A stretch of DNA of 62,388 bases, the filler included, from Intoshia linei (taxonomy: Eukaryota > Animalia > Orthonectida), in assembly GCA_001642005.1 (NCBI GenBank). It is 11 parts of 11 records of this genome, joined end to end, with 100 filler letters (N's around TTAATTAATTAA, not from the genome) between each part and the next. Parts side by side here need not be neighbours in the genome. Positions count along the whole stretch, not along the records: positions 52,989 to 62,388 come from LWCA01001360.1; 10 more parts are not named here. The stretch is one strand, 5' to 3'. The notes beneath the pieces are model-generated. The model saw only the letters and a program-made list of their open reading frames with translations. It did no database searches and was not told where the DNA came from. Shown here one piece after another: positions 464 through 62,388 of this stretch; positions within the stretch are counted from its first letter, which is position 1; the number at the start of each line of letters is the position of its first letter. A program made the translations under genes and the position numbers.

Positions 464-1754
464 ATCTACAGTAATAAATACTTATACAAAAATTGATGCT
501 GTTATAATTTAATTAGCCATGATATCGAATATACACGGCGTTCCAACAATATAATCACAAATTCGTATTAAAAACTATAAGAATTTGTAATTACAAAAAA
601 ATAATTTATTTTATTATTAATTTTTTATTGTCTTATTGGAATGCACTGTAATTTGGTAGTCAAATACGCGTATTAAATTTATTAAACGTAACCAAATTTA
701 ATTTTGAGTATGATGGTCGTTCATTGAAGATTTAATAATCAGTCCAATAAAATATACAGAGACGTTTACATCAGCATCACTATATTTTAAAGATTTAAAA
801 TAATTACATTACGCAGAAAATCTTGAATTAATATGCTTGGAGAAGTTTCATTGCACTGTAGTTTTGATTGATTTTGTAAATCTTTAATCTAAAATCAAAT
901 TACAGCGAAACTTGTCTTCAGTGGAACGTAAAATTGAGTTGTTATAACAAGTTCCATTGTAGAAAAGGTAACAATTTTGGTTATGTTTAAAATGTTGCTA
1001 AAAACAATATTTATTGTCATACCCATGGATTATCCATTTTAGACAAGATTAAAATTCCCTTTTAACATGTCTATTTACATCTAATCACTATAGAATATAA
1101 TTTTAAAACTAATTTTGTACATTAAAATGTATTTCATTAAAATAAGTTTCATTGTAGACAAGTTATAGTGTATTGTAGTTAAATGGGAATTAACTATTTA
1201 AGGAACCATCGTACATATTAAGCGATAGATAATATGAATAAATTATGATACATCAAAATCTTGTGCTAGATGATGTCAATAAATTTGAATGTCACAAAAA
1301 CGTGTGCCATAGTTCAGGTTCCTACACTTTTTTCATCACAAACAAGTAATTTACTATAAAATTTCCCACGGACCACTAAACGAAATTACTAGGCAAAATT
1401 TAAAAGAAGTAAGATAAATTAATATATAGATAGGATAAGAGATATAAATAGAAATAGGATAAATCGAAATAAATTATGTAATAATTCAAAGAGTCATCAT
1501 ACAAAATATTAAAACAAAATATAAATTAAATATTATTTAGCTTTTTGTGTATTGTTTTTTGTTGACATACTTATGACGCGTCATTTCATTATTTTATATA
1601 CGTTTGACCATTTCAAATGCATATTAAAGATACGATCGAATCGAATGACTCATTATACATACATCATTTTAAAGGCAATATTCACATAAATATACAATAT
1701 AGTATAATGTAGTATGAAATAATTAACTTAATAATTAAATAATTATGAATACTA

Positions 1755-2170
1755 AAATGCTTTTTTGACTGTGAAGTCGTCACTTATTCGGATTGAAATT
1801 TTTTATGTTATAATTTTTTAAATTTAAGGGCTGTTTTCATTATAGAAAGAAAAGTAATTTTGGGTTTTGGCCCTGAAGATATAATTTTTTAAATTTATGA
1901 TAATGTTTATGATTTTAAAATTCGCATCAGCGTATATATTTTTTTAAATTCTCCAACTCATTTAATTTTCAAAAAGAGGGACAACAGGGGTTTTTGACCC
2001 GTAAGATTTGAAATTGGGAGGTTGGAATTTATCTTAATATACGTTCCGGAAAAAACTGTAATTGAAATGTTATCTTTAAAAAATTTTAAAACGCGTAGTT
2101 ATTTAAATAAAGGTGAACAGACCGACACACACAGACACACAAACAAATTTGTTATGTGATATCACTGATA
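1755..2170 (-). mobile_element. Non-autonomous Helitron-like repeat, diverged copy
   Basis: Shares the block gtgaagtcgtcacttattcggattgaaattttt...ttctccaactc...acacacagacac with the copies at 32140, 34516, 55220 and (inverted) 61472. Confidence 0.7.
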
Positions 2171-2454
2171 TAGAATTACTACTTCACTGTATTACTAAAT
2201 TATCATGCACAAATTGCCTCTATAATTGCAAATGAAAATTTACACGATTCTATCGTTGACTTAAACGAATTTCACTGCATAAGGAAATGTTTTAATGTTT
2301 ACCTTTTTATTCATATTTTCAATTAAATTTAGAGAATTTTTTAATCTGTGAAACAATTTATTTATATTTTGCTCAGATTCTTTTTTAAATTTTCTATTAT
2401 TATTTCTAAATTATAAATGTATACATTCTAAAACATACTTCTTGTACCCAAGTA

Positions 2455-2698
2455 CAGTAATGGCAAAAATTTTCATTTGTTGTGTCAAAAAACAATTTTT
2501 GCTGTGTTCTTTTCTAGTTGCGTGTAACTTTTAAATGATAAATAATTTTAGGTATGTATATTTTTCTATTATTACACACTTTAGAGTTAATTTTTTCACA
2601 CCATATTACAAATTTCAAATAAGTTTTTTACCAGCGTTTCAGGCAGAATCCCTGTGCATGTCACTAGTGACACGCGTGTCATATTTTTGCCATCACTG
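2455..2698. mobile_element. hAT MITE
   Basis: 16-bp TIR CAGTAATGGCAAAAAT / ATTTTTGCCATCACTG; flanks cccaagta/accaagtg; subterminal TGACACGCGTGTCA palindrome seen in hAT ends. Confidence 0.8.
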
Positions 2699-3151
2699 AC
2701 CAAGTGCATTTATTTTTTTATCTATGCTATTATTATTTACTTTTTTTCTTGTAATAATATTGTGTCCATTTTTTTATTAGAAAGACCCATTTTGCACGTA
2801 GGTGTCTTTTTTGATTTTAACCATTTATAAAAAAAATGAAATCAGTTAATATTTACTCCTCAAATGTAATTGAAGTGGAATCTCGATCGTAAGTTTAGAA
2901 AATAAATTTATGCAATATTTTTTATTACTAAGACAAGTTTAAAAATGAAAAAGTAATAATACCTATATACATGTCTAGTGCATAATTTTCACTTTACATT
3001 ACGAGTTTGGCATGAACATGAAGGGTGAGTGCATTCAACACACGAGTTATGTAAAAGTGTGAAAATTATTAGCTATGACATGTTAATTTTTTTACTGTTT
3101 AGTCTATTAAATCAAAATTTCAATTTTTGCATGTTGAAAAATATAAATAAT

Positions 3152-3251
3152 NNNNNNNNNNNNNNNNNNNNNNNNNNNNNNNNNNNNNNNNNNNNTTAAT
3201 TAATTAANNNNNNNNNNNNNNNNNNNNNNNNNNNNNNNNNNNNNNNNNNNN
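3152..3251. other. Artificial assembly spacer (N44-TTAATTAATTAA-N44); also at 11873-11972, 25203-25302, 29019-29118, 31838-31937, 34416-34515, 37131-37230, 40138-40237, 47550-47649, 52889-52988
   Basis: Identical 100-nt block ten times; the core 12-mer puts TAA in all six frames. Confidence 0.97.
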
Positions 3252-3450
3252 ATGGATGTAGTATTAATTATTAAATTATGTATTCATTTAATTGTTTTGT
3301 ATTCTAGTTTTAAAAGTTTTAAAAATATTTTTACACCTTCACTGATCCGCACAAGTAAAAACATTTGGAATGTTTTGACAAAAACAGGAGCATCATGTGC
3401 TCTGAAAAATGATAACAAAATTAGCAATATGTAAGTAACAATTTTAAAGG

Positions 3451-3818
3451 TGCCATACAAAAATTACAATATAACTTTATTTAATGGAATGTTACCATCG
3501 AATGTGTTAAATATGTTTTGAGTGGTTTTATGTTGACCGTCATGTTTGGTTGTTCACTTTACATCTTTAAATTCAATTCAACCTCGTTTACTTTATATTT
3601 TATTGATGTTTAAATTTGCTATAATTTTATAAAAATTATCATTTTTCATTGATAAAAATTTTCACTAAAAACAAAAATAAATGAGGTAAAATTGAATTTA
3701 AAGATGCAAAGTGAACAACCAAACATGACGATTAACATAATTCCAGTTAAAACATATTTACAGGATCTCATCATAACATTCCAGTAAATAAAGTTATATT
3801 TTAGTTTTTGTAGAACAT
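3451..3818. repeat. Long inverted repeat / foldback element
   Basis: About 145-bp arms, e.g. cgtcatgtttggttgttcactttacatctttaaattcaatt pairs with aattgaatttaaagatgcaaagtgaacaaccaaacatgacg; spacer about 80 nt. Confidence 0.85.
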
Positions 3819-5318
3819 TTTTGTATGAAATTTTTAAATTGGCAAGGGTCTTCGCAAAAAATTCTCCAAAATCAATTTTTTTTTCAGTGTAGCCATAAAA
3901 CTGTATACGCGACTTTATCCGTTCCTGCACCATAAAATTTCCAAAAAAACTACTAAAATTCACACCTCTAATAAATATATTTTAAAAAAATTTAAAATAA
4001 ATGATCCTCAAAATCAATACTTAAAATTCAAGTGTAGTTTATAACCATTGATTACACTTATAAAAAAATTAAAGACCGACATGCATCTTTTGAAAAAGCA
4101 TTGTAGTTAATCTGTCTACTCTAGGAATACCTTAATTTATTTCAAATTATCATTTTAGGGATTCATACGGAAAAAACATGGACGGCCCAATAAAATTTAA
4201 ATCTAAAATTCAATTTAGTTATTTTCATTAATTTTAATTAATTTTAAAATCGTGCTTGATTTAGATTTTTTTTCAAATTTTATTACTTTATTATTATGAA
4301 TTCCAATTTCATCTTACAATACAGTGGAATCTTGATAATACATACAGCTAAATTACACAATATATTTATGCAATATTTTTTATTATTAAGACAACTTTAA
4401 AAATGAAAAAGGAATAAAGTAAATATCGCGCATTTTTTAAATTTATCAATAGGTTTAATGAATTTATAACTGCACATGACGATACCTTTCCTTCTGATTC
4501 AGAATCTGATTTTGAAATTATGGCTACTCAACCATCTAATAATATATCTAAGAATGAAGAAAATATAGATTTGGCTTTAAAAATCGTTGAATCATCGATT
4601 TTCTTGTCTAGTATAATTGATATGGACTCAGAGTTGGATTTTTTAGAATAATACAAAAAAAATTACAAGACAAAAAGTCTAAATATTTGTAGATTAAATT
4701 TATTTTTAAAACTTTTTCATCATAGTCGTTTAATTAAATTATATCACCATCATTTAATATATAATAGTATACTACAGAGATGTCAGACTCAATTTGCTTG
4801 TCAGGCCAAATGTGACACAAAAAAATATCTTCACTGAAATCATCATTAAATTAATTAAGAAAATTAATAGAATATATAAATAAATAAATGGGTTAAAAAT
4901 TTTTTATAATGCGGCCCGCGTAATTGAACGCAGGTATACTACAGTATGATTATAAAATTATAGATTTTTAGTTTTTTTAAATAATAAATAAATTAAAAAC
5001 GCGGCAATATTCTGTTTCATAAACATTATTTTAATAAATTGCAGTCCTTTTCGTATGTTCTGTATAAACTGTGCCTTTTCGTATTTTTGAAAAATAAAAT
5101 TAATAAATTATAGCATAGATTACTCTATATCAATTCAATGTGAAGTTTTTATATTATCTTGAAATATAAAGTTAAATTTAGTATTTGCTGTATGTATTAA
5201 CAAGTGTTTTCAGAATCAAATTTCCATTGTATGTAGTAAATCTGCTAGTAACGATAGAGCAAAATTAGTGTAACTATTGTTATCATCACTCAGTCTAGAA
5301 TTAATATATTATGTTCAT

Positions 5319-5689
5319 TAGGGTGTGCACTTTTGACATTTTTTTTTGAATTTCAAAAAGTATATTTGAGTGCAGTATATTGTAGGTAATCTTGATGATC
5401 TGCTTAAAGGTTCACTAAAAAGTATTCCGTATGGATGTGCCAATCTCAATTTTTTTCTAGACAATATATTTTTTGGTTGTGACATGAGGTCTTAGAAAAA
5501 AGAAATTAATTAATAATTTAAATAATAAACTAATGTTTGCGTTTCAATAATAATAAAAAAAATGCATTTTAAAATTTTGCTTTAGAAAATTTCAATTAAA
5601 TGAATTTTTTTTGTATATTCGTGATCAGCATATAAAAATACACCTATATGCAAATATACTTTTTGATCTTTAAAAAAGTGCACACCCTA
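5319..5689. mobile_element. TIR MITE (TAGGGTG-type end, hATm- or Tc1-like)
   Basis: Perfect 16-bp TIR TAGGGTGTGCACTTTT / AAAAGTGCACACCCTA; no clear 8-bp TSD. Confidence 0.7.
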
Positions 5690-7002
5690 CATAAAATATA
5701 ATGTTTGATATATAAGTTTCTAGTAGTTAACTATTGAAGTTACTGCTAGTAATTAATATCATTATCTTGTTGAAGAATGTACTTATAACTTCATTTTTAT
5801 GAGTTATACACCCGATTACGTTACTCTGCTCATAAAACCATCAAAAAAATGAATATATTTATTTTAGTTATATGATCATTGTAAATTACAATTTGTAAAG
5901 TATTTAATTAGTAGTTGATAAATAATTGTATTTAGTTATTACTAATAACTAATTAGTAATAATAATAACTTATTACGTACGTTAAAACTATAATTATCTT
6001 TATTCAATAAAAAGTTATACAATTGTCTATATATAATTGTTATTATTAATAGATTGAGGTATACCATTAGGAAATTGATTATATACTATATTACATATTC
6101 ATTACGTTAGTGAGATTTTGATCAGAGGAAATATTAAACATATAATTTCTTACATTGCATGTAAATAGTAAGACTAAGTAATTATGTTAATAGAAATAGC
6201 AAAGTTGAAAATTGAAGTAGCAACCAATAATTATTTTAAAATTATTTAAAAGGTAATATTAAACAAGTATGAATTAAATGATTTTATCGATTCTTAATTT
6301 ATGCTGTAATATAATGTATAGTTAGTCTAAATAATTTATGAATTTATTGATTGAAAGTTCACAAAGAAATTTAAGAAATAAATATAACTAATAATTGTAC
6401 AATGCAAATTAAAAAATGTACGCATTGTATCGACTTTTTCAAACACCTAAAATAGTCGAAATTATTAATATTCTTTATTATTACAATCAATATGTACATT
6501 AACATCATTTTACAATTTATATTGATAGTTGATATATATACATTTTTGTACTAATTTATGGATAAATAATATTGATTATGATTAGCAAACTCATTAATGA
6601 ATTTTTTTGCTTCAATCGATAATATATACAAAGTAGAACAAATTAAGGAAATATATGATAAAATTCGATTTAAATAACCTGTAAATTTAATTTTATACAA
6701 GTTAATTTATACTTTTAAATTACTTATTCAAATTATTTCATCTAATACATTATCCATATAATTGGATGGATAAGACTATTCATTTCATGTTATTTAATGA
6801 AATGGATAAATTAAATTTTCAAAATAATCTATTATTGACATTTACATTAATTTTCCAAAATATTAAAGTAAAACAATTGTTTCTCGATAATGCTGAAATT
6901 TCCAGCACTATTTTCAAAATATGCTTTTAATATTTTTTCATTTTTAAACGTTCACTTTGATAACACTTACATTTCAATATATTGAATTGTAAACTAATCA
7001 TT

Positions 7003-7356
7003 ATGAGTCTGATGAGATTTTTGTCATTAAAGGTTTTTGCTTTTGTTTTTTTATACTATCTTTTATTTAGAAGACAGCTTCTACTGATGGAAAATCTAAT
7101 CAAGATCCAAATAAATCACCTATATTAGAGAGTACTGATATTGGTGCAATCAATTTTAGTATTCACTATGATCATTTTGATAATATATTAACCATTAAAA
7201 TCATTCGTGCAATCAAATTACCAGCTATGGATATCACTGGAACTAGTGATCCTTATGTAAAAATTTCACTACTTCCAGATAAACGACCTGTATTAAAAAC
7301 CAATGTTAAAAGAAAAAATCTTAATCCAATTTGGAATGAAACATTTGCTTTTGAAG
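7003..7356 (+). CDS. SYT7: Synaptotagmin-7-like, partial (first half of C2A); exon 7071-7356, possible exon 7003-7032
   Basis: Manual translation IGAINFSIHYDHFDNILTIKIIRAIKLPAMDITGTSDPYVKISLLPDKRPVLKTNVKRKNLNPIWNETFAFEG matches Syt7 C2A (GTSDPxVK..LLPDK..KRKNLNPxWNETFxFEG); tttag acceptor and gtatg donor; 38-nt intron 7033-7070; later exons not found. Confidence 0.85.
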
Positions 7357-8580
7357 GTATGCAATTTTATTTGAAATTTTTACTGTGATATCGAAATGAA
7401 ATTTGGGGTTGTTAATCGAGCCCACAAATGGAAGGCTTTTTTCATTTATTTATAGTTTATTTATATTATTTAGTGTGCACTGTATAACATTATTAAAACA
7501 CTACAGCTAAACATTTTTGAAATTAAGGCTTTTAGTTAATTTTACTTTTATAAAAATTTCTTAAAAAAATATAATTGAATTGTTTCACTGGTATATTAGC
7601 TATTCTCAATCCAATTCTTTTTAAAGAGGAAGTCATGAAGGATTCCTAATCAATGGAATTTTATTAAGTTGAGACATATTTAAATTATATACTATTATTA
7701 TATAACTAGATTGATTCTTATGTAGTTACTTTGTACAAACAGCAGCTAACTCTGCCGAGGGTAGATTTTTTAATTTATGAGATACTGAGTATGATTTTAA
7801 AAACAATCAAATTATAATTACACTATATTAAATCGTTATAAAAATATGAATTCCACAAAATTTTATATTTTAAATATTTGTAGAACAAGATACATCATAT
7901 TTTCTTTTTGAATGAAGGAGTGGTTCCCAAACTTACTTCATCATGGACCGCTCAATTCACATCAAATTAAATTTATATAGCATTGTTAACATTTGTGTAA
8001 AAATTATAAAAATACAATTTGGTTAATGTCATTTTTTTAATTTATTAAATAGAATAATCTTAAAATAAAGTAAAAACAGTCCAATTCTAAAAATTGTCAT
8101 AAATAGCATAAATTCCCAGAAAAAATAAAATTAAGAAACCTATTTTGTCATTTTCAATGTGATGACATATATTCAGTATCAATTTAATAAATTAAAAACC
8201 TATAGTATCATTTTCAATGTGATGATATATTTACAGTATCAATCTAATAAATACTTGAAAATACCAATTATATATCAATAATTAAACGAATCTTCACTTT
8301 ATAAACATATTTTAGTCGAATTTTACCAATATTGTAAAGGATTGTAATAAATATAAAAATGGTAATAACAAAGTTGTATTACTTTTAGTAATTCGTTGTT
8401 GTTATTTGAAAAAGATTGATTTATAATAAATTAAAAATTATTTTTCACTGGGAATGCGTAGATTTCTGGAATTGAAATTTGGTATTTATATCAAATTACA
8501 AAAAAATTAGAAATATTCTATGGTGTTCACACCAGAGAATATTTTTTTTATGAGAAAAAATTATGTCAATTAATATGTTA

Positions 8581-52888: not shown

Positions 52889-53126
52889 NNNNNNNNNNNN
52901 NNNNNNNNNNNNNNNNNNNNNNNNNNNNNNNNTTAATTAATTAANNNNNNNNNNNNNNNNNNNNNNNNNNNNNNNNNNNNNNNNNNNNAAAATTTAATTT
53001 AAATATTTTATTATTTAAATTGTAAATGATTTCACATTATTTGAATTAATCGCATACTATAACATTACATTTTAAAAATTATTAAAATTTATTATAATAA
53101 ACTTAAATTTTTAATACGTTTTAAAT

Positions 53127-53460
53127 CAGTGCTGCCTAAAACGTACTTCTGGCAGTTTTATGTAAATTAATAAATGTTTCTATAATACAAATCATTGATT
53201 TATCCGAACGTTAACTTCGTATTTTGGTGAAAATATTTTTATTTTGACTAACTTAAATATTTCCTGAATGAATCTGCTGTACAGATAGAAATAGATTATT
53301 ACGATTTTAATAGAATTATGAAAGCAATTCAATAAAAAAATAGTTTTCAATTTAAATAAATTTTAAATATAATTTTTACCACCCCCTCCCCCAAAATATC
53401 CAAACGCCCCCTAAATGTTAAAATTACCCCAGGGGGCGGTACACTCGTTGAAGACCCCTG
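53127..53460. mobile_element. hAT Charlie-type MITE
   Basis: CAGTGCTGCCTAA ... TTGAAGACCCCTG; flanks ttttaaat/ttttagat. Confidence 0.65.
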
Positions 53461-54031
53461 TTTTAGATCAAATAAATTATATTTACAATAAATAAATAAC
53501 TGATATTTAAAGTAAGATAATATCGTAATTTTATATAAACTAGTATCATTAAAAGTAAATAATTAAATATGTTATTAACAAACTCTTAATTATAAATTAC
53601 TTTTTGTAGACATAAAGTTTCTATTGTATTTTAAAATATAGTTTCAATTAATTCTGGCGTAATCCTAATTCTACGAATAGACTTGATATAACCTCACCAA
53701 AGAAAATAATTTTTTAACTAAGGCGTTAGTTGCAGGTATTGATAATTTAATTATTTATTAATGCAATTTTCACATGAATTGATTGAAAAACCAATCTGAT
53801 TCGAAAAATTAATAATTTTTAAAAATAAACTTATTCTTAAATGTACTGAGTGTTCAGTAAAAATTCAGTACCCAGAAAATTTTAAATAAAAAAATCCAAT
53901 AACTCAGTAAAAGTAAAATTAAGTACTTACTTATGTACCATTTTAACTAAATTGGTTAATAAATAACTCAATATTTTTTACTAAAGTTGAACACATTACT
54001 CAGTACTATAAAAGAAAATTTATAAATAATT

Positions 54032-57000
54032 TTAATGGAAATGAGAATGACTATGATCATGATATTTTGAAGTATGTAAATTTTTGCCATGATGATAATT
54101 CCGATGATTATAATAATGTGGCTTATGATTGTAATTATGAGAATGACCGTTTTGAATGAGGTTTCTTTGTTTTTTTATAAAATTTTGATGAGCCAAATTC
54201 ATATAAATTTCATAAGCATGCATATTACGAATAATAGGATCACCATATCTTTCAATATTCACATGAGAATGAGGTTGTATATGATGACTAGATTGATGAT
54301 ACTGTTGTGGATGATTATGATGTCCATAATTCGAATAGCTGGGACTATTTTCAAAATAACCATGAACATTAATCTGACTCGATGGATACAAATCTTTATC
54401 ATGATAGTTATTTCCATTAAATTCACCATCATGGTCATGTACATGATGTCTATGATCATGTTGATCGTACCCGTGGAATCTTTCTGCATTTGTTACATAC
54501 GGATTGTAAGCATACTCGTTATGATTAGAGTACCCAGAAGGGTATTTCGAATGTGATACATAGTCATCATGAACATTTGCATGCGTTTTGTCATAATGAA
54601 TAGGCCTATATCCATTATGACTGTGTGAATTTTTTAATTTCGTGTGATCATAATTTGAAATGTTGTGACTACTGTTTGATGGTTTTGAATTCAAAGTATG
54701 TTCATTTCCATCAGCTAGATGATTATAATTATGTTTATTTCCATAATCAATGATATCATTAGGATTCAATTCGTCGTGTAATCCGTGGTACGATCCTCTA
54801 TTGTCATGATACGTATCTGTGTGGTCTTTAATAGAATGACTAACGTCTTTATAATAGTCGCCATAATATTTATCATGTGATGCATGCTTATTTGTATAAT
54901 CATTTACAGAGTGGTTGTTATTCTTATCTTTATTAATATTGTAATCGAAACCATCATTTGGGCGACTGTCAGTGTGGTCACTAATAGCATAATTATCGTT
55001 TTCATTGAACTCGTAATCGTATAACTTGCTATTTAGGTTATCTCCGGGTTTAAAATCATATGAGACCTCACTCAGTTTTCTTTTGACTAAAATTTAAATA
55101 TTACATAATATGTATAATCCACTTGTCCACTTTTGATGTGTTTTTTTATTAGAAAACTCATTTTAGACGTGGATGATTTTATATTATAAAAGCATTTATC
55201 CCCGAAAAATGAATAATAAAATGCTGTTTGACCGTGAAGTTGTCACTTATTCAGATTGAAATTTTTTGTGTGTGTTAACAGAATACAACAGTACCACCTG
55301 TAATTTTTTTAAATTCTAGGGTTGTTTTATAAAAAAAAGAGTAATTTGGAGTTTTGGCCCTGAAGATGTAATTTTTTTAAATTTAAATTTATGATGATAT
55401 TTATGATTTTAAAATCCGTATCAGAGAATATATTTTTTTAAATTTTCCAACTCGTTTTATTTTCAAAAAAAGGACAATTGGGGTTTTTAACCCGTAAGAT
55501 GTGAGTTTGGGATGTTGAAATTTATCTTATTTTACGTCCCGAAAAAAAACTGTGATTGAAATGTGAACTTTATAAAATTCTAAGACTGGTAGTTATTGAA
55601 ATAAACGGTAACACACACAAATATTGCGTAGCATATTATATACGTAAGGATAACTTTATTTTATGTATAATCAATTTTAATTTTATTTCGATGGATAATT
55701 ATATTGGTAATTCATTTGATGGATTTTTCTAATAAAAAAAGTGGATACCCTAACCGTTAGGGCCTAACGTATCAGTGGCGTAGCGTCATAGTATGAAAGG
55801 TGTTCGCCGAACACCCTTGACAATTTAAAATTTAAAAAAATTATATTTAATAAATAGAATAATTTTTATTATTTAAGTTCGATATCACATCATAGTTCAT
55901 ATTCGATATTCATATAAAATGTCAATAGTAAATTATCTGTTAAAATCTATCTTTAAAAAACATCAGTACAAAATTTTAAACTCATAATAAATTTGAACAT
56001 CGTAAAAATTGGATAAATATTTTCTATAGAGATTTAAATTCTGAAATTATACTCAACTTTAGGTGTCTTGAAAATTTAGCGAACACAATTTCATAGTATC
56101 TTAATCATATTTTATGCTCACATTTATAATAGTAAAATATTTTCTATAGAGATTTACATTGTCAAATTTTACTCAAGGTGTGTTGAAAATAAAATGAACA
56201 CCTTGCACTTAGATATAAATTTAGACTGAACACTATACTTTCATTATTGCGATGTTTTCATTGTTTAATTATTTTTTATAGAGATTTTAATATTATACTC
56301 AAGGTGTCTTGAAAATTTAGCGAACACAATTTCATAGTATCTAATGATTAGAGCCATTCATAGAGCATAATGACTAGGTTACGCTAGATTTTGATTATGA
56401 TCTTAAAGAAGTTTGCATCATTGTGAATTACATAATTATGTTTATTTGTTTACATTTTATTTTATTTTATTTATTGTTGCTTAACGACTTTAGAGCATAA
56501 TAAGAGCATAATGTTTGAATGGCTCTACTAATGATACATCTTTTGCTAACATTTATAATATGGAAATATTTTCTATAGATTTACATATCAAATTTTACTC
56601 AAAATGTGTTGAAAATAAAATGAACAACTTACACTTAGATATAGATTTAGACTTTAATTAAATACAGTATTTATTTCTAATTGGTCAAAAATTTTATTTA
56701 CAAGAATGAAACAAATTAAATTCACATCAAATACAATTTATCTTTCAAGCATACTTTATAGAAGTGGTTTTCAAATTTTCTGTATTCGCGACCCCTTATG
56801 AACATTTCTTTATATTTCGGTATTAATTTTAACTTTATTTAAAAATTTTATGTTACCAAGGAACCATTCCCGAACACCTTGTGAGAAAAGTCACGCTACG
56901 CCACTGTAACGTATAATGTATAAGATGGTTTGTATATATGAAAAAATGAATATACCTCGTCGGTAGACAGATGGAGGCTCTAAATTGAAAATTAAAACAT

Positions 57001-58701
57001 AAAAAAATAAAAATTACCTGGTGTTATATATTGTGGGAAATCTTTTGGCATCGAACTCCATGGTGATATTTTACTAGTAACGCGAAAATTAGATAATGCA
57101 ACAAACCCACTTCTGTTGATAACGCTTACAATAATCTAAAATACTATTTAAAAAGTATGATTATGAATCATTTATACTTGTATTAAATTATCAGTTTCAA
57201 CCCAAAAATGTCCTTCATATGTTTTCCATTTATCACCTTTACTTTTGTTTGTATTTGGAAGGTAATGTGGTAAATTTCCAGGCGATTGGACATGTATTTT
57301 AACCGTATTGTTAATCGCTGTCGAGTAATAATCAAGTTTTACAGTTAACAAAATTGACTCGTATACATCTTTACTATTTGCAAATGGGTGATATCTTAAT
57401 CTAAATATCATATAATGTTAATTAGTTAAGATGATTTATGTATATAAATCTTGTCAGTACTGTAAAATGTACAAATAAAGCGTTGAAGCTGTTGGCGACT
57501 TATTTTTATTTTTATTTAACTTAACATCAAGAAAAAGTAAAATGCAATAACAATCTTTGTACAAAAATAAAATATGTAATTTATGTCGTTTGATTGTATA
57601 TTTTATGATTTTAAACACAAAATATGATGAAAATATTAAAAAATTGAATACAATAAATTAAAATTGAAATTTAATTTGAAAATCGATAGTTACAATACAT
57701 TAAAAAAATTTTTTTGAATTTTATCTAAAAATGAAATAAACAAAAATAAAGTTTTATTTAAAATTTTCACTTTATTATACAAGAAATTGAAACAGAGCAA
57801 GCGTCTCATTAATTTTAGATGGAATTAATTCAATTTGTTCGTTTTACCATTTATGAATAATTACGCTAATCTTAACGATCTTGGACTATATTTATAATCT
57901 TATGAACCATGACTTTGTTTACTTTTAATTTTAAATCTAATGTTGGTAATTTAATTAATAATTTAGATTTTTAATGATGATTTTATAATAAAAGTTATAC
58001 GTTTTTGATGATGAAAATATCTATTTGTGGACTTTAATTTTTATTATTGCTTCTAAGCTTTCAATATGATATTTTTTCAGTGGTAATTTTCAAAATCTCG
58101 CTAAAACGAACTTTGGATCGTGTTGATAGTTTCACAACTCTAATCAGTACATTTTTCAAATAAACAGTAGATAGATGATTTTTTGTTGACCGACAAACCA
58201 AGTGCTGGATTATTTATTATTACGTTTATTTTCAAATAAAACTTTTTTTTTAGATATTTTATGGTTATTTTAATTATATTTCATTCATAAAAAACGGACA
58301 AAAATGTCCTCTGCGAGTAGTAAAAAGTTAATAAACTTGAAAAAATCTAATATACTCAAATCCTTTTTTTAAATTTAAATAATCTGCATCTGACCTAAAA
58401 CTGATATGATCATATAGCTATTCTACAGCAAACGAAGCATATTCTAGACCGCCGTACCCTAATACGTGAGTATAAATTACGTAGCAAATCCATCTGTAGT
58501 TTTGGCATAATGAACGACATTTTCCAAACTTTTCTCATCTTGATTAATAACCCAGTTCCCAGTATACCTACCGCATGTATGATTGATAAATGGACATTCA
58601 AACACAACTAAAGATAAAAATAAAGATGAAAAAATAAAAAAACCATAAACAGATGCTGTAAAGTTGAATAGAAATAAGATGAATATAAAAATGAAATTCA
58701 T
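54032..58701 (-). CDS. Predicted secreted 534-aa protein: signal peptide, MAM-like domain, RRVKR site, His/Asn/Tyr/Asp-rich tail; exons 58644-58701, 58481-58607, 57178-57400, 57018-57135, 56956-56979, 54032-55086
   Basis: All five introns GT-AG with matching phases; exons total 1605 nt = 535 codons with no internal stop; no assembly gap inside. Confidence 0.75.
55220..55650 (-). mobile_element. Non-autonomous Helitron-like repeat (intronic)
   Basis: Same family; minus-strand 5' end A|TCCTTACGTATATAA. Confidence 0.75.
55773..56906. mobile_element. hAT non-autonomous element with internal tandem duplications
   Basis: TIR CAGTGGCGTAGCGT / ACGCTACGCCACTG; perfect TSD taacgtat; repeated GAACAC motifs. 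Confidence 0.93.
56349..56527. mobile_element. 179-bp hAT MITE nested in the 55773-56906 element
   Basis: TIR TAGAGCCATTCA / TGAATGGCTCTA; perfect TSD ctaatgat. Confidence 0.92.
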
Positions 58702-58882
58702 AATTGAAAAGTGAAATTAAACGAAATTTAAAATTAATAAATTAATAAACAAAAAATAAAACAATTTAACTACACAATGAATACAAATACATTTCAACAA
58801 TATGATACTGTTTACAATGTGATAACATTTACAATAGCGTCTTATTAACATTTTAATAAAAAAAGTTAAACACAGATTAAAA

Positions 58883-60652
58883 TTAAATTGAAGTTTCTGA
58901 ATTGACAACTAGAGTAAAAAAATTATCCTGTAATCCGATTGAATGTTCTTGTAAATAGAATTGAGGAATTGAACGACATGTAACAAGTAAAGAAACGTCA
59001 GATTGTTTTAATCTAAAAATTGTTCCATGTGTGATTGATCCACTGAGATTATCAGAACAAATAATTTTCCATGAATCACGGATATTTTTTTCTCTTTTTA
59101 GAGATTTATTGTAACTACTTTTGAAAATTTTTTTATCTTTACATTTTTCTTCAGATGCAGAATGTCTTCCAATTGAAGGGTATCCATTATTCTCAAGTTG
59201 AGTTGTGATTGAGGCGGATATAGTATATGTATTATAAATAACATTGCCTTGGTGTACATAGCGGTTTACAAATGTTTTGGGTCCCATATCATTACTAAGA
59301 CACAAAGCTAAATAATCGATAATGGATCGTAAATTGTATTTTTGTTGTTGTCGCGTAATCCTCAAGTACTTTTTCAAAGGGTTTCCCAAAGTCGCAAAAA
59401 CTGCTTCAGCTGCTTCCCGAGATGTCAAAGGTGGTGATATGTCGTTATTCAACCTCCTCACATTATTAAAAGATTCTTCTGCAGCAGTCATTAGTCTTAC
59501 TTTTCTCCTTTGCACACGTCTTTCATAATCAACTTCTTCATAGAATCGATCATTTCTACTTTTATTTTTCATTCTTTGTTTGATCATGCCAGAATATTTT
59601 TGAACGTCGATAGTTTCTTCGTTCGACATTTGAGGAATCATTGCGTCGTTGTTTACATTTTGATTCGGACCTTCGTTCACATTGTAAATTTTAAATGTTG
59701 ATAATCTGGCTCTACGCTTAGCGTACCTTTCAAGATGTGGATTGTAACCAGGAAAATCGTTAAAGTAAAACTGCAACATTTGAACAGCAGTCCTCTGAAT
59801 ACTAAGTTGACCAATAATGTAATTTTTAGTAAAACCGTCTGGAGACCTAACCATTTCTATCGAATATTTACACCGCATTTGTCGAATTTCTAGAAGCAGG
59901 ATAGCAACATAATGTAAGAAAAGTTGTGTGTCCAAATACGTTGAAGCATATCTAACAATGACATCCAACCTTTCTTCTATTCTAAAAGCTATTTTAACCA
60001 CATAGTACAGCCAGAATATAAGAGATATAAACATGGACAAAAAGGTAAGGAACGTACGAATTGTAAAATTACGAGGCATTATGGCTAATTTTGATCTGAA
60101 AAATATTGCCCATGAACCTATCAAAGCCAATAATATCTTTGAACCAATAGAAATGTATATCCCGTCACATTCTACATCACATTTACTAATTTTCCAGCCA
60201 TCGACTAATCCCAATTTTGGCAATATAAACATAATAATTGGCGATATGAACGCTGCAATAAATACTATACCGGCTATGAACATTGTAAACAAACTAGAAT
60301 AAAGCTGCGAACAATAAGAACTTTTTACATTGTATTTTTCCAAGGCGTTATGAAATACGGCTGTTCCATCTGTAATTACAGAATAAGCCGTTTCAGATGT
60401 TGTGTTGGTTGTCCTATCAGACTTTGCATCACCCCAATCATCGTCTTGAGGGATGATGCGTACGGCATCGTGGTCTGGTTTTGAACGATTTCGGTAAAAT
60501 TGAGGAGGGTTTAAAACTACTCTCCGATTATCCATACCGTTTTGTTGGTTATAGACATTATTCATTTCTTGTCTGTTTTGATAATTGTAATTTCTACTTT
60601 TTCCAGGATAAGGAATCTCACTGTGAACTGATTTTATTGACATCCTTTCCAT
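58883..60652 (-). CDS. Vang: Vang-like / strabismus planar cell polarity protein, intronless CDS, about 589 aa
   Basis: QDDDWGD, four TM helices, C.V.CDG.YIS, RSPDG, GQLSIQR, FYEE.DYERRV.RRK.RL.TAAEESF, EAAEAVF, L.KYLRITRQQ, C-terminal ETSI; first ATG at 60652 (the ORF track start at 60709 is TTG). Confidence 0.97.
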   Translation of the reverse strand: MERMSIKSVHSEIPYPGKSRNYNYQNRQEMNNVYNQQNGMDNRRVVLNPPQFYRNRSKPDHDAVRIIPQDDDWGDAKSDRTTNTTSETAYSVITDGTAVFHNALEKYNVKSSYCSQLYSSLFTMFIAGIVFIAAFISPIIMFILPKLGLVDGWKISKCDVECDGIYISIGSKILLALIGSWAIFFRSKLAIMPRNFTIRTFLTFLSMFISLIFWLYYVVKIAFRIEERLDVIVRYASTYLDTQLFLHYVAILLLEIRQMRCKYSIEMVRSPDGFTKNYIIGQLSIQRTAVQMLQFYFNDFPGYNPHLERYAKRRARLSTFKIYNVNEGPNQNVNNDAMIPQMSNEETIDVQKYSGMIKQRMKNKSRNDRFYEEVDYERRVQRRKVRLMTAAEESFNNVRRLNNDISPPLTSREAAEAVFATLGNPLKKYLRITRQQQKYNLRSIIDYLALCLSNDMGPKTFVNRYVHQGNVIYNTYTISASITTQLENNGYPSIGRHSASEEKCKDKKIFKSSYNKSLKREKNIRDSWKIICSDNLSGSITHGTIFRLKQSDVSLLVTCRSIPQFYLQEHSIGLQDNFFTLVVNSETSI

Positions 60653-61471
60653 CTTTATATAAAGGATTTTAAATGGTATTGATTCAAACCTAATTGATGT
60701 TTCTTTCAAAAATTGAAAATGCTAAATGATTTTGTTTTTCATTCCTATGGTTGTTGCCATTTTATGGTATCGTATAAAGTTAGCGCGTATCTGTAGTATG
60801 AATTGTAATTTATGATGCGAGACTACTGTCAGACTGTCAGCTGTAGTGTGTATATTTTAAAGAAAATGCCGCCAATGGATTCTAATTAACTAAGTACCAA
60901 AGAGTCTCTGGACTCAAATTTACAAATTTTAAGATGGATAATGTAAATTGACAATGAAACAGTTGCATACTTATTAATCATTAATGTATTAATTCATTTA
61001 TTGTACGATTCATCGTGTACGAATTATACTACGTCTAGTAAAATTTACAACAAAGGATCCGAAGCAGTTCAAAGTATATAAATTCTGCCATTGAACAATT
61101 ATAATTATAGTTAACTTTACGTGGCTATTGTACATATTATCAGTTAAAATTTAGTAAAGCCAAAACTACATGTTACTTATCTATGATGAATAGGGTAATT
61201 TTTTATTCCTATATAAAAAAAAAAGCTGAACTAAAAATTACATTTACTGACTTTATCTGAACTTAACATTTTTGTGTTTCTATAGTTAATACCAACTGAA
61301 TCTACTTATCCGAAACCTAACTTTTGGTGGCCTTAAATTTAATAGACCTTAATTGTAATATTCACATAGGCTTCGACCATGATGGTGTCGGTCATTTTAC
61401 AATGTAATTTTTACATAATAAATTAATATGAATAAAACTTAAAATATGGAATATTTATTTAAAATTTATTA

Positions 61472-61906
61472 TCCTTACTTATATAATGAGCTATGCAATA
61501 TTTGTTTGTGTGTGTGTCTTAGAATTTTATAAAGTCCATATTTCAATTACATTTTTTTCCGGGGGTGTTAGCAAAAGTATTTTTCAACCTCCCAAACACA
61601 TCTTACGGGTCAAAAAGCCCAATTGTCCTTTCTTTAAAAATCAAACGAGTTCGATAATGTAAAAAAATATACTCTGATATCTTCAAACCAAAACCCCAAA
61701 TTACCCTTTCTTTTTAATTAAAGCAGCCCTAGAATTTAAAAAAAAATTACAGGTGGTACAGTTGTATCCTGTTAAGACACACAAAAAACTTCAATCTGAA
61801 TAAGTGACACCTTCACGGTGACGTGAATTTATTTTTTTGGTAGAATAAAATATGCTCTCGGTAGAACTAGGTGATGTTTGTACGTAGTACATAACAGTCA
61901 ACCTAG
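61472..61906 (+). mobile_element. Apparently full-length non-autonomous Helitron-like element (435 bp)
   Basis: A|TCCTTACTTATATAA...(GT)n...hairpin...CTAG|T; inserted between A and T with no TSD. Confidence 0.75.
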
Positions 61907-62388
61907 TGTTTTATAAAATTTTTGCACGTTTCATTTTTAAAAAAAAAGGTAATTTGGGGTTTTGAATATGAAGGTATGCGTCTTAAGGATGAGATCCATG
62001 ACAATGATTTTAAAATGCGTTTCAAAATTAATGTTTTATTAAATTTATCGGCTGATTTTAGTTTTTTAAAAAGGGAAAAGTGGGTTTTAGATCCTGAAAG
62101 ACTTAAATTCATAAACTGAAAAGTATCTAATAGAAACTACTAGTAGTTAATCTAGTAACTTTTACTTCTTTTACAAAAACTTACTTAATTAATGAACAAA
62201 GTTTACTTTTTCATTTGAAAATATGCACCATGCAGTCACAAAAAATTCTTGATAATTCTTTAAAAATGTTGTTTTCTCACTTTTTTCTGAGAGAAATCAG
62301 ATATGATATGATCAAAACTGATATTATTCAAAACATCATTCTCAATTGACATTAAGGAGAGCGCATTCAAACGAGGTTGAGCTAAGCA

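What the first reader, a model, noticed from the sequence alone, without database searches (positions are those of the whole stretch)
54032..58701. Hidden secreted proprotein: MAM-like domain, furin site and 350-aa histidine-rich tail
Seen: three ORF-track fragments plus two small exons splice in phase. The product has a hydrophobic leader MNFIFIFILFLFNFTAS, then ECPFINHTCG..GNW...GFATLRYHPF...KLDYY...KGDKWKTYEGHF...IQIIVSVINRSGFVALSNFRVT, a Pro-rich linker, YRRVKR made by the exon 5/6 junction, and a Cys-free tail that grades from acidic (D/E/N/Y) to His-rich and ends HDHSHSHFH. Known: MAM domains follow CxF...CG.W ... A.L.SP ... G..W ... Q+++.....G.+A+D.+.+; RxKR is the furin consensus; His-rich proteins harden annelid jaws and squid beak and bind Zn, Cu or haem. 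Inference: a folded prodomain releases a metal- or pH-responsive self-assembling polypeptide, for cuticle, adhesive or host-interface use. I know no described protein with this layout. Only the first MAM Cys pair is present, so the fold call is tentative.
Basis: partly seen in the sequence, partly recalled or inferred. Interest (0 to 1): 0.85.

Follow-up and report, generated by a model that had tools for sequence, protein, structure and literature searches.

The report
Orthonectid secreted MAM-like, histidine-rich orphan protein
This is a real, spliced and expressed gene of the tiny marine parasite Intoshia linei, already in GenBank as a hypothetical protein, encoding a probably secreted protein with a likely MAM-like beta-sandwich head, one furin-type cleavage motif and a long disordered histidine-, asparagine-, tyrosine- and aspartate-rich tail; nothing similar was found in any database searched and its function is untested.

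Summary
The piece is the whole 9.4-kb contig LWCA01001360.1 of Intoshia linei (GCA_001642005.1).

- **Gene model:** The gene is uncharacterised, not hidden.
- **Splicing:** transcript-derived contigs from a 2024 study join the exons at 55086/56956, 57135/57178 and 57400/58481. The His-rich exon is therefore part of the same mRNA as the N-terminal domain.
- **Tail (348 aa):** Cys-free and non-repetitive, with H 15%, N 14%, Y 11% and D 9%. Half its codons are NAY. It grades from acidic to basic/His-rich, and its net charge goes from +29 at pH 5.5 to -12 at pH 7.5.
- **Cleavage motif:** RVKR at residues 183-186 is the only R-x-K/R-R motif. It lies across the splice junction at the domain boundary.
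- **MAM call:** half supported. Pfam and PDB sequence searches are blank and only two Cys exist. ESM Atlas features point to MAM (0.92, 21 of 30 hits), and the Atlas model resembles jelly-roll domains (TM 0.62-0.66). My own AlphaFold model failed.
- **Homologues:** none found anywhere.

Secretion, cleavage, metal binding and self-assembly remain inference. Moderately interesting orphan gene.

The parts
58644..58701 (-). Exon 1a. ATG at 58701 with an in-frame TAA six codons upstream. Encodes the hydrophobic leader (residues 1-19), a putative signal peptide with likely cleavage after Ser17.
   Evidence: Kyte-Doolittle maximum 3.6 over residues 3-12. Cleavage site inferred by the -3/-1 rule; no SignalP available.
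58608..58643 (-). 36-nt T-rich GT..AG intron used in the deposited model. If retained it adds 12 hydrophobic residues in frame.
   Evidence: Not covered by RNA contigs (skipped 58599-58640 as a repeat).
58481..58607 (-). Exon 1b: start of the N-terminal domain. Holds the only two Cys (C24, C31), an NHT sequon between them, and W38.
   Evidence: X3 record 14 covers 58481-58598.
57178..57400 (-). Exon 2: core of the N-terminal domain (residues 62-136).
   Evidence: its only hit in 1.84 billion representatives is the protein itself.
57018..57135 (-). Exon 3: last strands of the domain (residues about 136-156), then the Pro/Ser-rich linker.
   Evidence: the 42-nt intron 57136-57177 is removed in all three runs; strand 136-143.
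56956..56979 (-). 24-nt microexon encoding the end of the linker and the first two Arg of the basic cluster.
   Evidence: the joint 55086/56956 appears in X1, X2 and X3, and the record coordinates leave exactly 24 nt.
55079..55086 (-). Second half of the RVKR motif (residues 183-186), completed across the splice junction with 56956-56959. Candidate proprotein-convertase site, followed by Lys.
   Evidence: the only R-x-K/R-R in the protein; 3.9% chance anywhere, 0.25% at the boundary.
54032..55078 (-). Rest of the last exon: 348-aa Cys-free, non-repetitive tail rich in H/N/Y/S/D (residues 187-534), plus the stop codon.
   Evidence: transcribed contiguously with the upstream exons.
54428..54460 (-). 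Densest internal His cluster (residues 393-403; alternating His with Asp, Arg and Val).
   Evidence: HxHxH seen 5 times against 1.2 expected.
54146..54241 (-). Island of ordinary composition in the tail (residues 466-497), predicted as a single helix with a 3-4 spacing of hydrophobic residues. Possible self-association element.
   Evidence: helix 467-497, the only tail segment with pLDDT above 50; heptad register. Weak evidence.
54035..54145 (-). Basic, His-richest C-terminal segment (segment pI 9.9) ending in an alternating His/Ser/Asp run.
55087..56955 (-). 1869-nt intron 4, filled with mobile-element debris (see Noticed in passing).
57401..58480 (-). 1080-nt intron 1. Spliced out in X3 record 14. 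X1 record 1 reads through the acceptor for 93 nt.

Best explanation
This is gene A3Q56_07012 of the orthonectid Intoshia linei, a lineage-restricted, expressed six-exon gene for a secreted two-module protein.

Shown:
- The mRNA is spliced as modelled.
- The long frame is coding.
- The product has a hydrophobic N-terminal leader, a roughly 140-residue beta-rich domain with two Cys, a Pro/Ser linker carrying the only R-V-K-R motif, and a 348-residue low-complexity tail.
- The tail is not a repeat array. About half its codons are NAY (His, Asn, Tyr, Asp), and His is ten times the level in the neighbouring gene.
- Acidic residues dominate the tail's first third, and His and basic residues its last third. 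Calculated net charge goes from about -12 at pH 7.5 (-14 at pH 8.1) to +29 at pH 5.5.

Inferred:
- The leader is a cleaved signal peptide.
- The domain is a divergent MAM-like jelly roll with a single disulfide (C24-C31).
- A furin/kexin-type convertase cuts after R186 in the secretory pathway, separating the folded head from the tail.
- The tail is an intrinsically disordered polyampholyte. Its His clusters (HxH, HxHxH), Tyr and Asp would let it stay soluble and cationic in acidic secretory vesicles. At seawater or tissue pH it could condense or bind Zn, Cu or Ni, giving an extracellular matrix, coating or adhesive material. Possible sites are the microvillar cuticle of the free stage or the parasite-host interface.
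For: - Splicing and co-transcription.
- Identity with the deposited gene and contig.
- Coding frame: (0 of 20000 shuffles stay open; 11-64 stops in the other five frames).
- Metazoan context: the neighbouring gene is Strabismus/Van Gogh, PF06638, E 3e-124.
- Leader hydropathy and absence of any other hydrophobic segment.
- MAM-like head: (features 0.92 with 175 shared, 21 of 30 hits MAM; Atlas model TM 0.62-0.66 to jelly-roll CBM_4_9 and MAM clusters over residues 20-160). Strands also appear at 93-100 and 136-143 in my otherwise poor model.
- RVKR: unique and placed at the domain boundary.
- Tail composition, gradient, charge switch and His-motif enrichment. No tandem repeats.
- Analogy: His-rich disordered proteins that switch with pH and zinc are documented for the annelid jaw protein Nvjp-1 (PMC9465683) and mussel mefp-12 (PMC13022425). 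His and Lys act as nucleophiles for DOPA-quinone cross-links in trematode eggshell and squid beak (PMC11727788). Orthonectids have a microvillar cuticle and are placed with annelids (PMC6543705).
Against: - There is no homologue, so no conservation evidence exists that any tail feature is under selection.
- The H/N/Y/D set is exactly the NAY codon box in a genome piece of about 27% GC, so part of the composition could be mutational.
- Pfam MAM and PDB sequence searches are blank, and only one MAM disulfide is possible.
- AlphaFold gave no usable model.
- The ESM Atlas evidence is a lead with a stated false-positive rate of 4-10% at this score, and was not calibrated for parts of proteins.
- The leader has no basic n-region.
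- Presence of a convertase in I. linei was not checked.
- Lys at P1' is not a preferred furin context (my own knowledge).
- His at 15% is well below Nvjp-1 (above 25%), and Gly is only 5%.
- The animal has no known hard parts.
- The RNA contigs give no stage or tissue information.
Confidence: 0.5

Rival explanations
1. Uncleaved modular surface or matrix protein. The MAM-like head is the working adhesion or glycan/protein-binding module, as in other MAM proteins. The His-rich tail is a spacer or secondary binding region, and RVKR is fortuitous or only partially used.
For: - MAM domains are normally functional extracellular interaction modules, not prodomains (PMC5104691).
- A single motif has a 3.9% chance of occurring anywhere in a protein of this composition.
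- Lys at P1'.
- There is no evidence of cleavage.
Against: - The motif sits exactly in the Pro-rich linker between the modules (0.25% by chance).
- The basic cluster holds three of the protein's four dibasic pairs.
Confidence: 0.22
2. Fast-evolving parasite secretory protein whose tail has no specific metal or material role. It would be a compositionally drifting low-complexity region (NAY-codon run) in a lineage-specific gene, possibly a host-interaction or immune-decoy antigen.
For: - Orphan status in 5.8 billion and 1.84 billion sequences.
- 49% NAY codons.
- No repeats and no detectable relatives of the tail in the ESM Atlas.
- Orthonectids evolve very fast (PMC6543705).
Against: - His is enriched tenfold over the neighbouring gene, while the other NAY residues are enriched only about twofold.
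- The ordered acid-to-base gradient and the HSH/HxHxH clustering exceed composition-shuffled expectation (P 0.0008 and 0.012).
- The frame is kept open over 350 codons in AT-rich DNA.
Confidence: 0.17
3. Metal or haem buffering and detoxification protein, analogous to Plasmodium HRP2 or histidine-rich glycoprotein. It would be secreted to sequester Zn, Cu, Ni or haem at the host interface rather than to build a material.
For: High His content with HxH clusters and flanking Asp, and a parasitic lifestyle.
Against: No repeats of an HRP2-type motif. The nemertean host tissue is not known to me as a haem-rich niche. No direct evidence.
Confidence: 0.08
4. Annotation or assembly artefact: a chimeric or non-functional transcript, with the His-rich frame not translated.
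For: Low contig depth (about 4-10). One contig retains the 3' end of intron 1, and intron pieces occur in the RNA contigs.
Against: - Exact GT..AG intron removal in three runs with 0 mismatches.
- In-phase junctions including a 24-nt microexon.
- A 534-codon open frame.
Confidence: 0.03

Closest known systems
MAM domain proteins (Pfam PF00629: meprins, RPTPmu, neuropilins, nematode MAM-domain proteins)
   Same: - Extracellular N-terminal domain of about 140-160 residues.
- An N-terminal Cys-x6-Cys-Gly motif followed by Trp.
- Aromatic residues spaced much like the NRP1 core (my rough reading against the residue numbers in PMC5104691).
- A C-terminal hydrophobic strand pair.
- Best ESM Atlas feature hits, and jelly-roll structural neighbours.
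   Different: - No Pfam hit at E<=10.
- Two Cys instead of four.
- The DD of the metal-site strand appears replaced by Ser-Asn (inference without an alignment).
- No known MAM protein carries a His-rich tail; my literature search for MAM plus histidine-rich found nothing relevant.
Nvjp-1, the His/Gly-rich zinc-binding jaw protein of the annelid Nereis virens
   Same: Secreted, intrinsically disordered, rich in His, Tyr and Asp/Glu, with pH-dependent zinc coordination and hardening (PMC9465683). Annelid affinity of orthonectids (PMC6543705).
   Different: - No sequence similarity.
- His 15% against above 25%, and Gly 5% against 35%.
- Asn-rich.
- Has a folded head and a convertase motif.
- Orthonectids have no jaws.
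Mussel His-rich plaque protein mefp-12 and squid histidine-rich beak proteins
   Same: His-rich secreted proteins stored in vesicles that undergo Zn- and pH-dependent phase separation and solidify at seawater pH (PMC13022425; review PMC9999432). The tail here has a calculated charge switch across the same pH range and one helix island.
   Different: mefp-12 is a coiled coil with zinc-finger-like domains. The protein here is mostly disordered, Cys-free and unrelated in sequence.
Trematode vitelline (eggshell precursor) proteins
   Same: Cys-free, Tyr-rich (12-15%) secreted precursors cross-linked through DOPA-His/Lys chemistry (PMC11727788). The tail has 11% Tyr, 15% His and 6% Lys.
   Different: No TES domain or any Pfam hit. 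Presence of a tyrosinase in I. linei not checked. No eggshell is described for orthonectids, to my knowledge.
Profilaggrin (my own knowledge, not checked with tools)
   Same: A folded N-terminal domain released by furin-type convertases from a long His-rich, phase-separating low-complexity region.
   Different: Profilaggrin is intracellular, has an S100 head and a repeat-based tail, and is vertebrate-specific. This is analogy only.

Membership tests
MAM domain (PF00629) | Match to the Pfam MAM profile at or near the gathering score | tested here: not met
   No family at E<=10 for P0001 or for the exon pieces. No MAM chain among the PDB sequence hits at E<=10.
MAM domain (PF00629) | Jelly-roll beta-sandwich fold | tested here: inconclusive
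   The ESM Atlas model of residues 20-160 aligns to CBM_4_9 and MAM clusters at TM 0.62-0.66. My AlphaFold single-sequence model has pLDDT 35 and is unusable, so no fold search was run on it.
MAM domain (PF00629) | Four conserved Cys forming two intramolecular disulfides (PMC5104691) | tested here: not met
   The only Cys are C24 and C31, so at most the first pair is present.
MAM domain (PF00629) | Language-model feature similarity to MAM clusters | tested here: met
   Score 0.92 with 175 of 256 features shared; 21 of 30 hits carry PF00629. This is a lead-level test with a 4-10% false-positive rate at this score.
MAM domain (PF00629) | Conserved Ca/Na-site residues and aromatic core (PMC5104691) | not testable with these tools
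   No MAM sequence with a session reference was available to align. Only a rough spacing comparison was possible.
Proprotein-convertase substrates | R-x-K/R-R motif in an exposed region of a protein that enters the secretory pathway | tested here: met
   RVKR at 183-186 in the Pro/Ser linker, with a hydrophobic leader at the N-terminus.
Proprotein-convertase substrates | Actual cleavage, and a furin/kexin enzyme in the organism | not tested
   No proteome search was possible by reference, and the literature search was blank.
His-rich structural proteins of the Nvjp-1 type | Sequence homology, or His above 25% with Gly around 35% | tested here: not met
   No hit other than the protein itself. 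The tail has His 15.2% and Gly 4.9%.
Trematode eggshell synthesis (TES) proteins | TES domain | tested here: not met
   No Pfam family hit.

The most novel reading that the evidence does not exclude
An orthonectid-specific material or interface protein of a layout not described before. A divergent single-disulfide MAM-like head is cut off by a convertase to release a non-repetitive His/Tyr/Asn/Asp polyampholyte. This tail would switch from soluble cation to condensed, metal-cross-linked matrix between vesicle pH and seawater or tissue pH. It would be a new, independently evolved member of the His-rich bio-material proteins, in an animal with only a few hundred cells.
Probability: 0.2. Interest if true: 0.65.

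Novelty: new variant of a known kind. Interest (0 to 1): 0.45.

Why it matters
Orthonectids are extremely reduced annelid-related parasites. Almost nothing is known about the proteins they secrete onto their cuticle or into the host.

This gene is a clean, expressed example of a lineage-restricted secreted protein. It combines a recognisable ancient extracellular fold with a tail whose chemistry (His, Tyr, Asp, charge reversal near pH 6.5) matches the design rules of pH- and zinc-switchable marine biomaterials.

If the tail does condense or bind metal, it would give a non-repetitive sequence model for such materials and a marker for an orthonectid secretory cell type.

If it does not, it is a useful case of how NAY-codon bias in an AT-rich genome can produce a "histidine-rich protein" look.

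It does not open a long-standing question by itself.

Tried and rejected
- **Pfam on each exon by reference and on P0001:** nothing, apart from a meaningless Presenilin match to the hydrophobic leader (E 0.07).
- **PDB sequence search:** only E~0.3 matches of the linker to cephalosporin acylases, judged chance.
- **phmmer of exon 2 against 1.84 billion representatives, and word-indexed searches of the tail and of residues 18-190:** the protein itself only.
- **AlphaFold2 single sequence:** pLDDT 35. Because of this, no fold search was run and the second structure job was not spent; with no homologues, no alignment could improve it.
- **ESM Atlas on the tail:** no usable hit.
- **Tandem repeats in the tail:** none, which rejects the idea of a recent microsatellite-type expansion.
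- **Rfam and tRNA scans of the piece:** nothing.
- **Literature:** nothing for the locus tag, for MAM plus histidine-rich, or for Intoshia plus convertase.
- **Joined model:** I did not type or join the spliced model myself. Exons were searched by reference, and the joined protein was used only as the database's own record, P0001.
- **Domain-only fold:** a fold of residues 18-165 alone could not be made because no reference exists for that stretch.
Full report
**Where it is.**
The piece (52989-62388, about 27% GC) is the complete 9,400-nt contig LWCA01001360.1 of the Intoshia linei assembly GCA_001642005.1. I. linei is an orthonectid, a minute parasite of nemerteans.

Two genes are called on the contig, both on the window's minus strand.
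- One is a Strabismus/Van Gogh homologue at 58886-60709 (PF06638, E 3e-124).
- The other, 181 nt downstream, is the gene in question.

Its product is in NCBI and UniRef as "hypothetical protein A3Q56_07012", 534 aa (P0001). The gene is therefore not hidden. It is annotated but uncharacterised, and I found no paper mentioning the locus tag.

**Checking the observation.**

The CDS is 58701-58644, 58607-58481, 57400-57178, 57135-57018, 56979-56956 and 55086-54035. That is 1602 nt, and all five introns are GT..AG, of 36, 1080, 42, 38 and 1869 nt. These sizes fit the short-intron habit of I. linei, where the median is 57 bp and most introns exceed 30 bp (PMC6543705).

The deposited model removes it. 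It is in frame, so either version keeps the leader and the domain.

**RNA evidence.**
The one sequencing-run search returned three small runs of one 2024 study. They held about a third of the sampled words, which is close to the exon fraction of the span. Laying them on 53500-59300 gave contigs that lack the introns exactly.
- X3 record 14 (1516 nt, 0 mismatches) runs 54059-55086, then 24 further letters, then 57018-57135, 57178-57400 and 58481-58598.
- The 55086/56956 and 57135/57178 joints occur in all three runs.
- The 57400/58481 joint occurs in X3.

These contigs must come from spliced RNA. The His-rich exon, the 24-nt microexon and the N-terminal domain exons are therefore one transcript.

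Caveats:
- Contigs say nothing about level, stage or strand.
- X1 record 1 reads 93 nt past the exon-2 acceptor.
- Pieces of intron 1 also occur at about half the exon depth, so unspliced RNA or some DNA is present.
- The 36-nt intron was not covered.

**Is it coding, and more than chance?**
The 350-codon frame of the last exon stayed open in 0 of 20000 nucleotide shuffles. The other five frames carry 11-64 stops. An in-frame TAA lies six codons upstream of the ATG.

**The head.**
Residues 1-17 are a strongly hydrophobic leader with small residues at -3/-1 before Val18. I infer a signal peptide; no predictor was available. There is no other hydrophobic segment, which suggests a soluble secreted product.

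Residues about 20-160 contain the only two Cys (C24, C31), five N-x-S/T sequons and alternating hydrophobic stretches.

The sequence-level tests for MAM were negative.
- Pfam gave nothing at E<=10, on the whole protein or on the exon pieces.
- PDB sequence search gave only chance-level acylase matches to the linker.
- phmmer of exon 2 against 1.84 billion representatives found the protein itself only.
- The word-indexed search of residues 18-190 found the protein itself only.

The ESM Atlas placed MAM clusters first by language-model features: 0.92, 175 of 256 features shared, and 21 of 30 hits MAM. By the tool's own calibration this favours true family membership roughly six to one, though it was not calibrated for parts of proteins. 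The Atlas's own model of residues 20-160 aligns with jelly-roll CBM_4_9 and MAM clusters at TM 0.62-0.66.

My AlphaFold2 single-sequence model was unusable (pLDDT 35), although it did draw strands at 93-100 and 136-143. With no homologues, no alignment could rescue it.

Against the MAM features listed for NRP1 (PMC5104691):
- the jelly roll is plausible;
- only one of the two disulfides can exist;
- the metal-site Asp pair of the last strand seems replaced by Ser-Asn, which is my inference without an alignment.

I put "jelly-roll sandwich" at about 0.75 and "divergent MAM" at about 0.6.

**The junction.**
The linker (residues about 157-182) is Pro/Ser-rich. The microexon supplies Tyr-Arg-Arg, and the junction with the last exon supplies Val-Lys-Arg-Lys. 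RVKR (183-186) is the only R-x-K/R-R in the protein, and three of the four dibasic pairs lie here.

In composition-preserving shuffles, such a motif appears anywhere in 3.9% of trials and within the boundary region in 0.25%. That makes a convertase site a reasonable inference. Cleavage, and the presence of a convertase in this species, were not tested (one search was blank).

**The tail.**
Residues 187-534 are H 15.2%, N 14.1%, Y 10.9%, S 9.5%, D 9.2% and K 6.0%, with no Cys.

His is tenfold the level in the neighbouring Vang gene, while N, Y and D are about twofold. These four residues are exactly the NAY codon box. In the tail 49% of codons are NAY (38% NAT), against 19% in Vang, and second-position A is 61%. 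A mutational contribution to the composition must therefore be considered. This pattern also explains the Ile/Met-rich mirror ORF on the plus strand (54089-54556) as an artefact.

Several features argue against pure drift.
- There are no tandem repeats at DNA or peptide level.
- HSH (5 observed against 0.8 expected, P 0.0008) and HxHxH (5 against 1.2, P 0.012) are clustered beyond composition.
- The tail has an ordered gradient. By thirds, Asp falls 19/11/2 and His rises 10/19/24, and segment pI runs from 4.5 to 9.9.

The whole tail has pI 6.5. Its calculated charge is +29 at pH 5.5, -0.6 at pH 6.5, -12 at pH 7.5 and -14 at pH 8.1.

One island of ordinary composition (residues 466-497) is the only part predicted helical. 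It shows a 3-4 hydrophobic spacing.

The ESM Atlas found no look-alike of the tail. The tail query found no relative among 5.8 billion proteins.

**How it most likely works.**
Shown: transcription, splicing, coding frame, composition and motif positions.

Inferred: entry into the secretory pathway, folding of a MAM-like head, cleavage after R186, and a disordered tail whose protonation state changes sharply between vesicle pH and sea or tissue pH.

By analogy, I favour a secreted matrix, coating or adhesive role.
- Nvjp-1 shows zinc- and pH-dependent sclerotisation, with Asp-His salt bridges at low pH (PMC9465683).
- Mussel mefp-12 shows Zn/pH-dependent phase separation and then solidification at seawater pH (PMC13022425).
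- DOPA-quinone cross-links form to His and Lys in eggshell and beak (PMC11727788).

The only extracellular material I can cite for orthonectids is the microvillar cuticle (PMC6543705).

The rivals are an uncleaved adhesion protein with a His-rich appendage, a drifting low-complexity region in a fast-evolving parasite secretory protein, metal or haem buffering, and an artefact. They are listed with odds in the Rival explanations section.

**Comparison and novelty.**
It is not demonstrably a member of the MAM family: two defining features were tested and not met, one was inconclusive, and one lead-level test was met. It may well share the fold.

It is not related to any known His-rich protein. 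It shares their physicochemical logic, not their sequence.

The layout of signal peptide, MAM-like head, convertase motif and non-repetitive His/Asn/Tyr/Asp tail was not found in any search. I therefore class it as a new variant of known kinds. It is of moderate interest, mainly to people working on orthonectid biology or on His-rich biomaterials.

- Exons were searched by reference.
The joined sequence was used only as the database record P0001.
- A domain-only fold could not be made, for lack of a reference to that stretch.

Noticed in passing
window 58886-60709 (-): Intronless Strabismus/Van Gogh (Vang) homologue (PF06638, E 3e-124) ending in a Glu-Thr-Ser-Ile PDZ-type C-terminus. The deposited call is 589 aa, so its true start lies inside the 608-codon ORF. 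Its stop is only 181 nt upstream of the ATG of the His-rich gene. RNA contigs over it have depth about 400-2300 against about 4-10 for the His-rich gene; the tool warns that depths are not rankable.
   Followed up: partly
window 55773-56906 (inside intron 4): A 1134-bp non-autonomous DNA transposon: perfect 14-bp terminal inverted repeats (CAGTGGCGTAGCGT) flanked by an 8-bp target-site duplication (TAACGTAT at 55765-55772 and 56907-56914). This is the hAT-superfamily signature. It has internal 66-nt and 53-nt direct sub-repeats (56049-56653) and is multi-copy in the RNA contigs.
   Followed up: partly
window 55231-55653, with an inverted copy at 61469-61819 and a partial copy at 62004-62088: An interspersed repeat of about 420 bp is present in intron 4 and, inverted (78-94% identity), upstream of the Vang gene. 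RNA-contig depth over it reaches 1,600-8,200 with many variant contigs, so it is a high-copy, transcribed family. No Rfam or tRNA match.
   Followed up: partly
window 57401-57493 and 57994-58224 (intron 1): X1 record 1 runs through the exon-2 acceptor for 93 nt. An in-frame ATG at 57411 would give a leaderless product starting just before exon 2. Other intron-1 pieces occur in the RNA contigs at 0 mismatches and about half the exon depth. This could be retained intron or pre-mRNA, DNA carry-over or an internal start; it was not resolved.
   Followed up: no
window 54089-54556 (+): A 155-codon Ile/Met-rich ORF lies antisense to the His-rich exon. It is the mirror image of the NAT codon run (ATN codons), not a gene.
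   Followed up: yes
window 58608-58643 (-): The 36-nt T-rich intron of the deposited model is among the shortest plausible for this genome and is in frame. If retained it adds a second hydrophobic stretch, which could turn the leader into a longer signal or anchor. No RNA evidence either way.
   Followed up: partly
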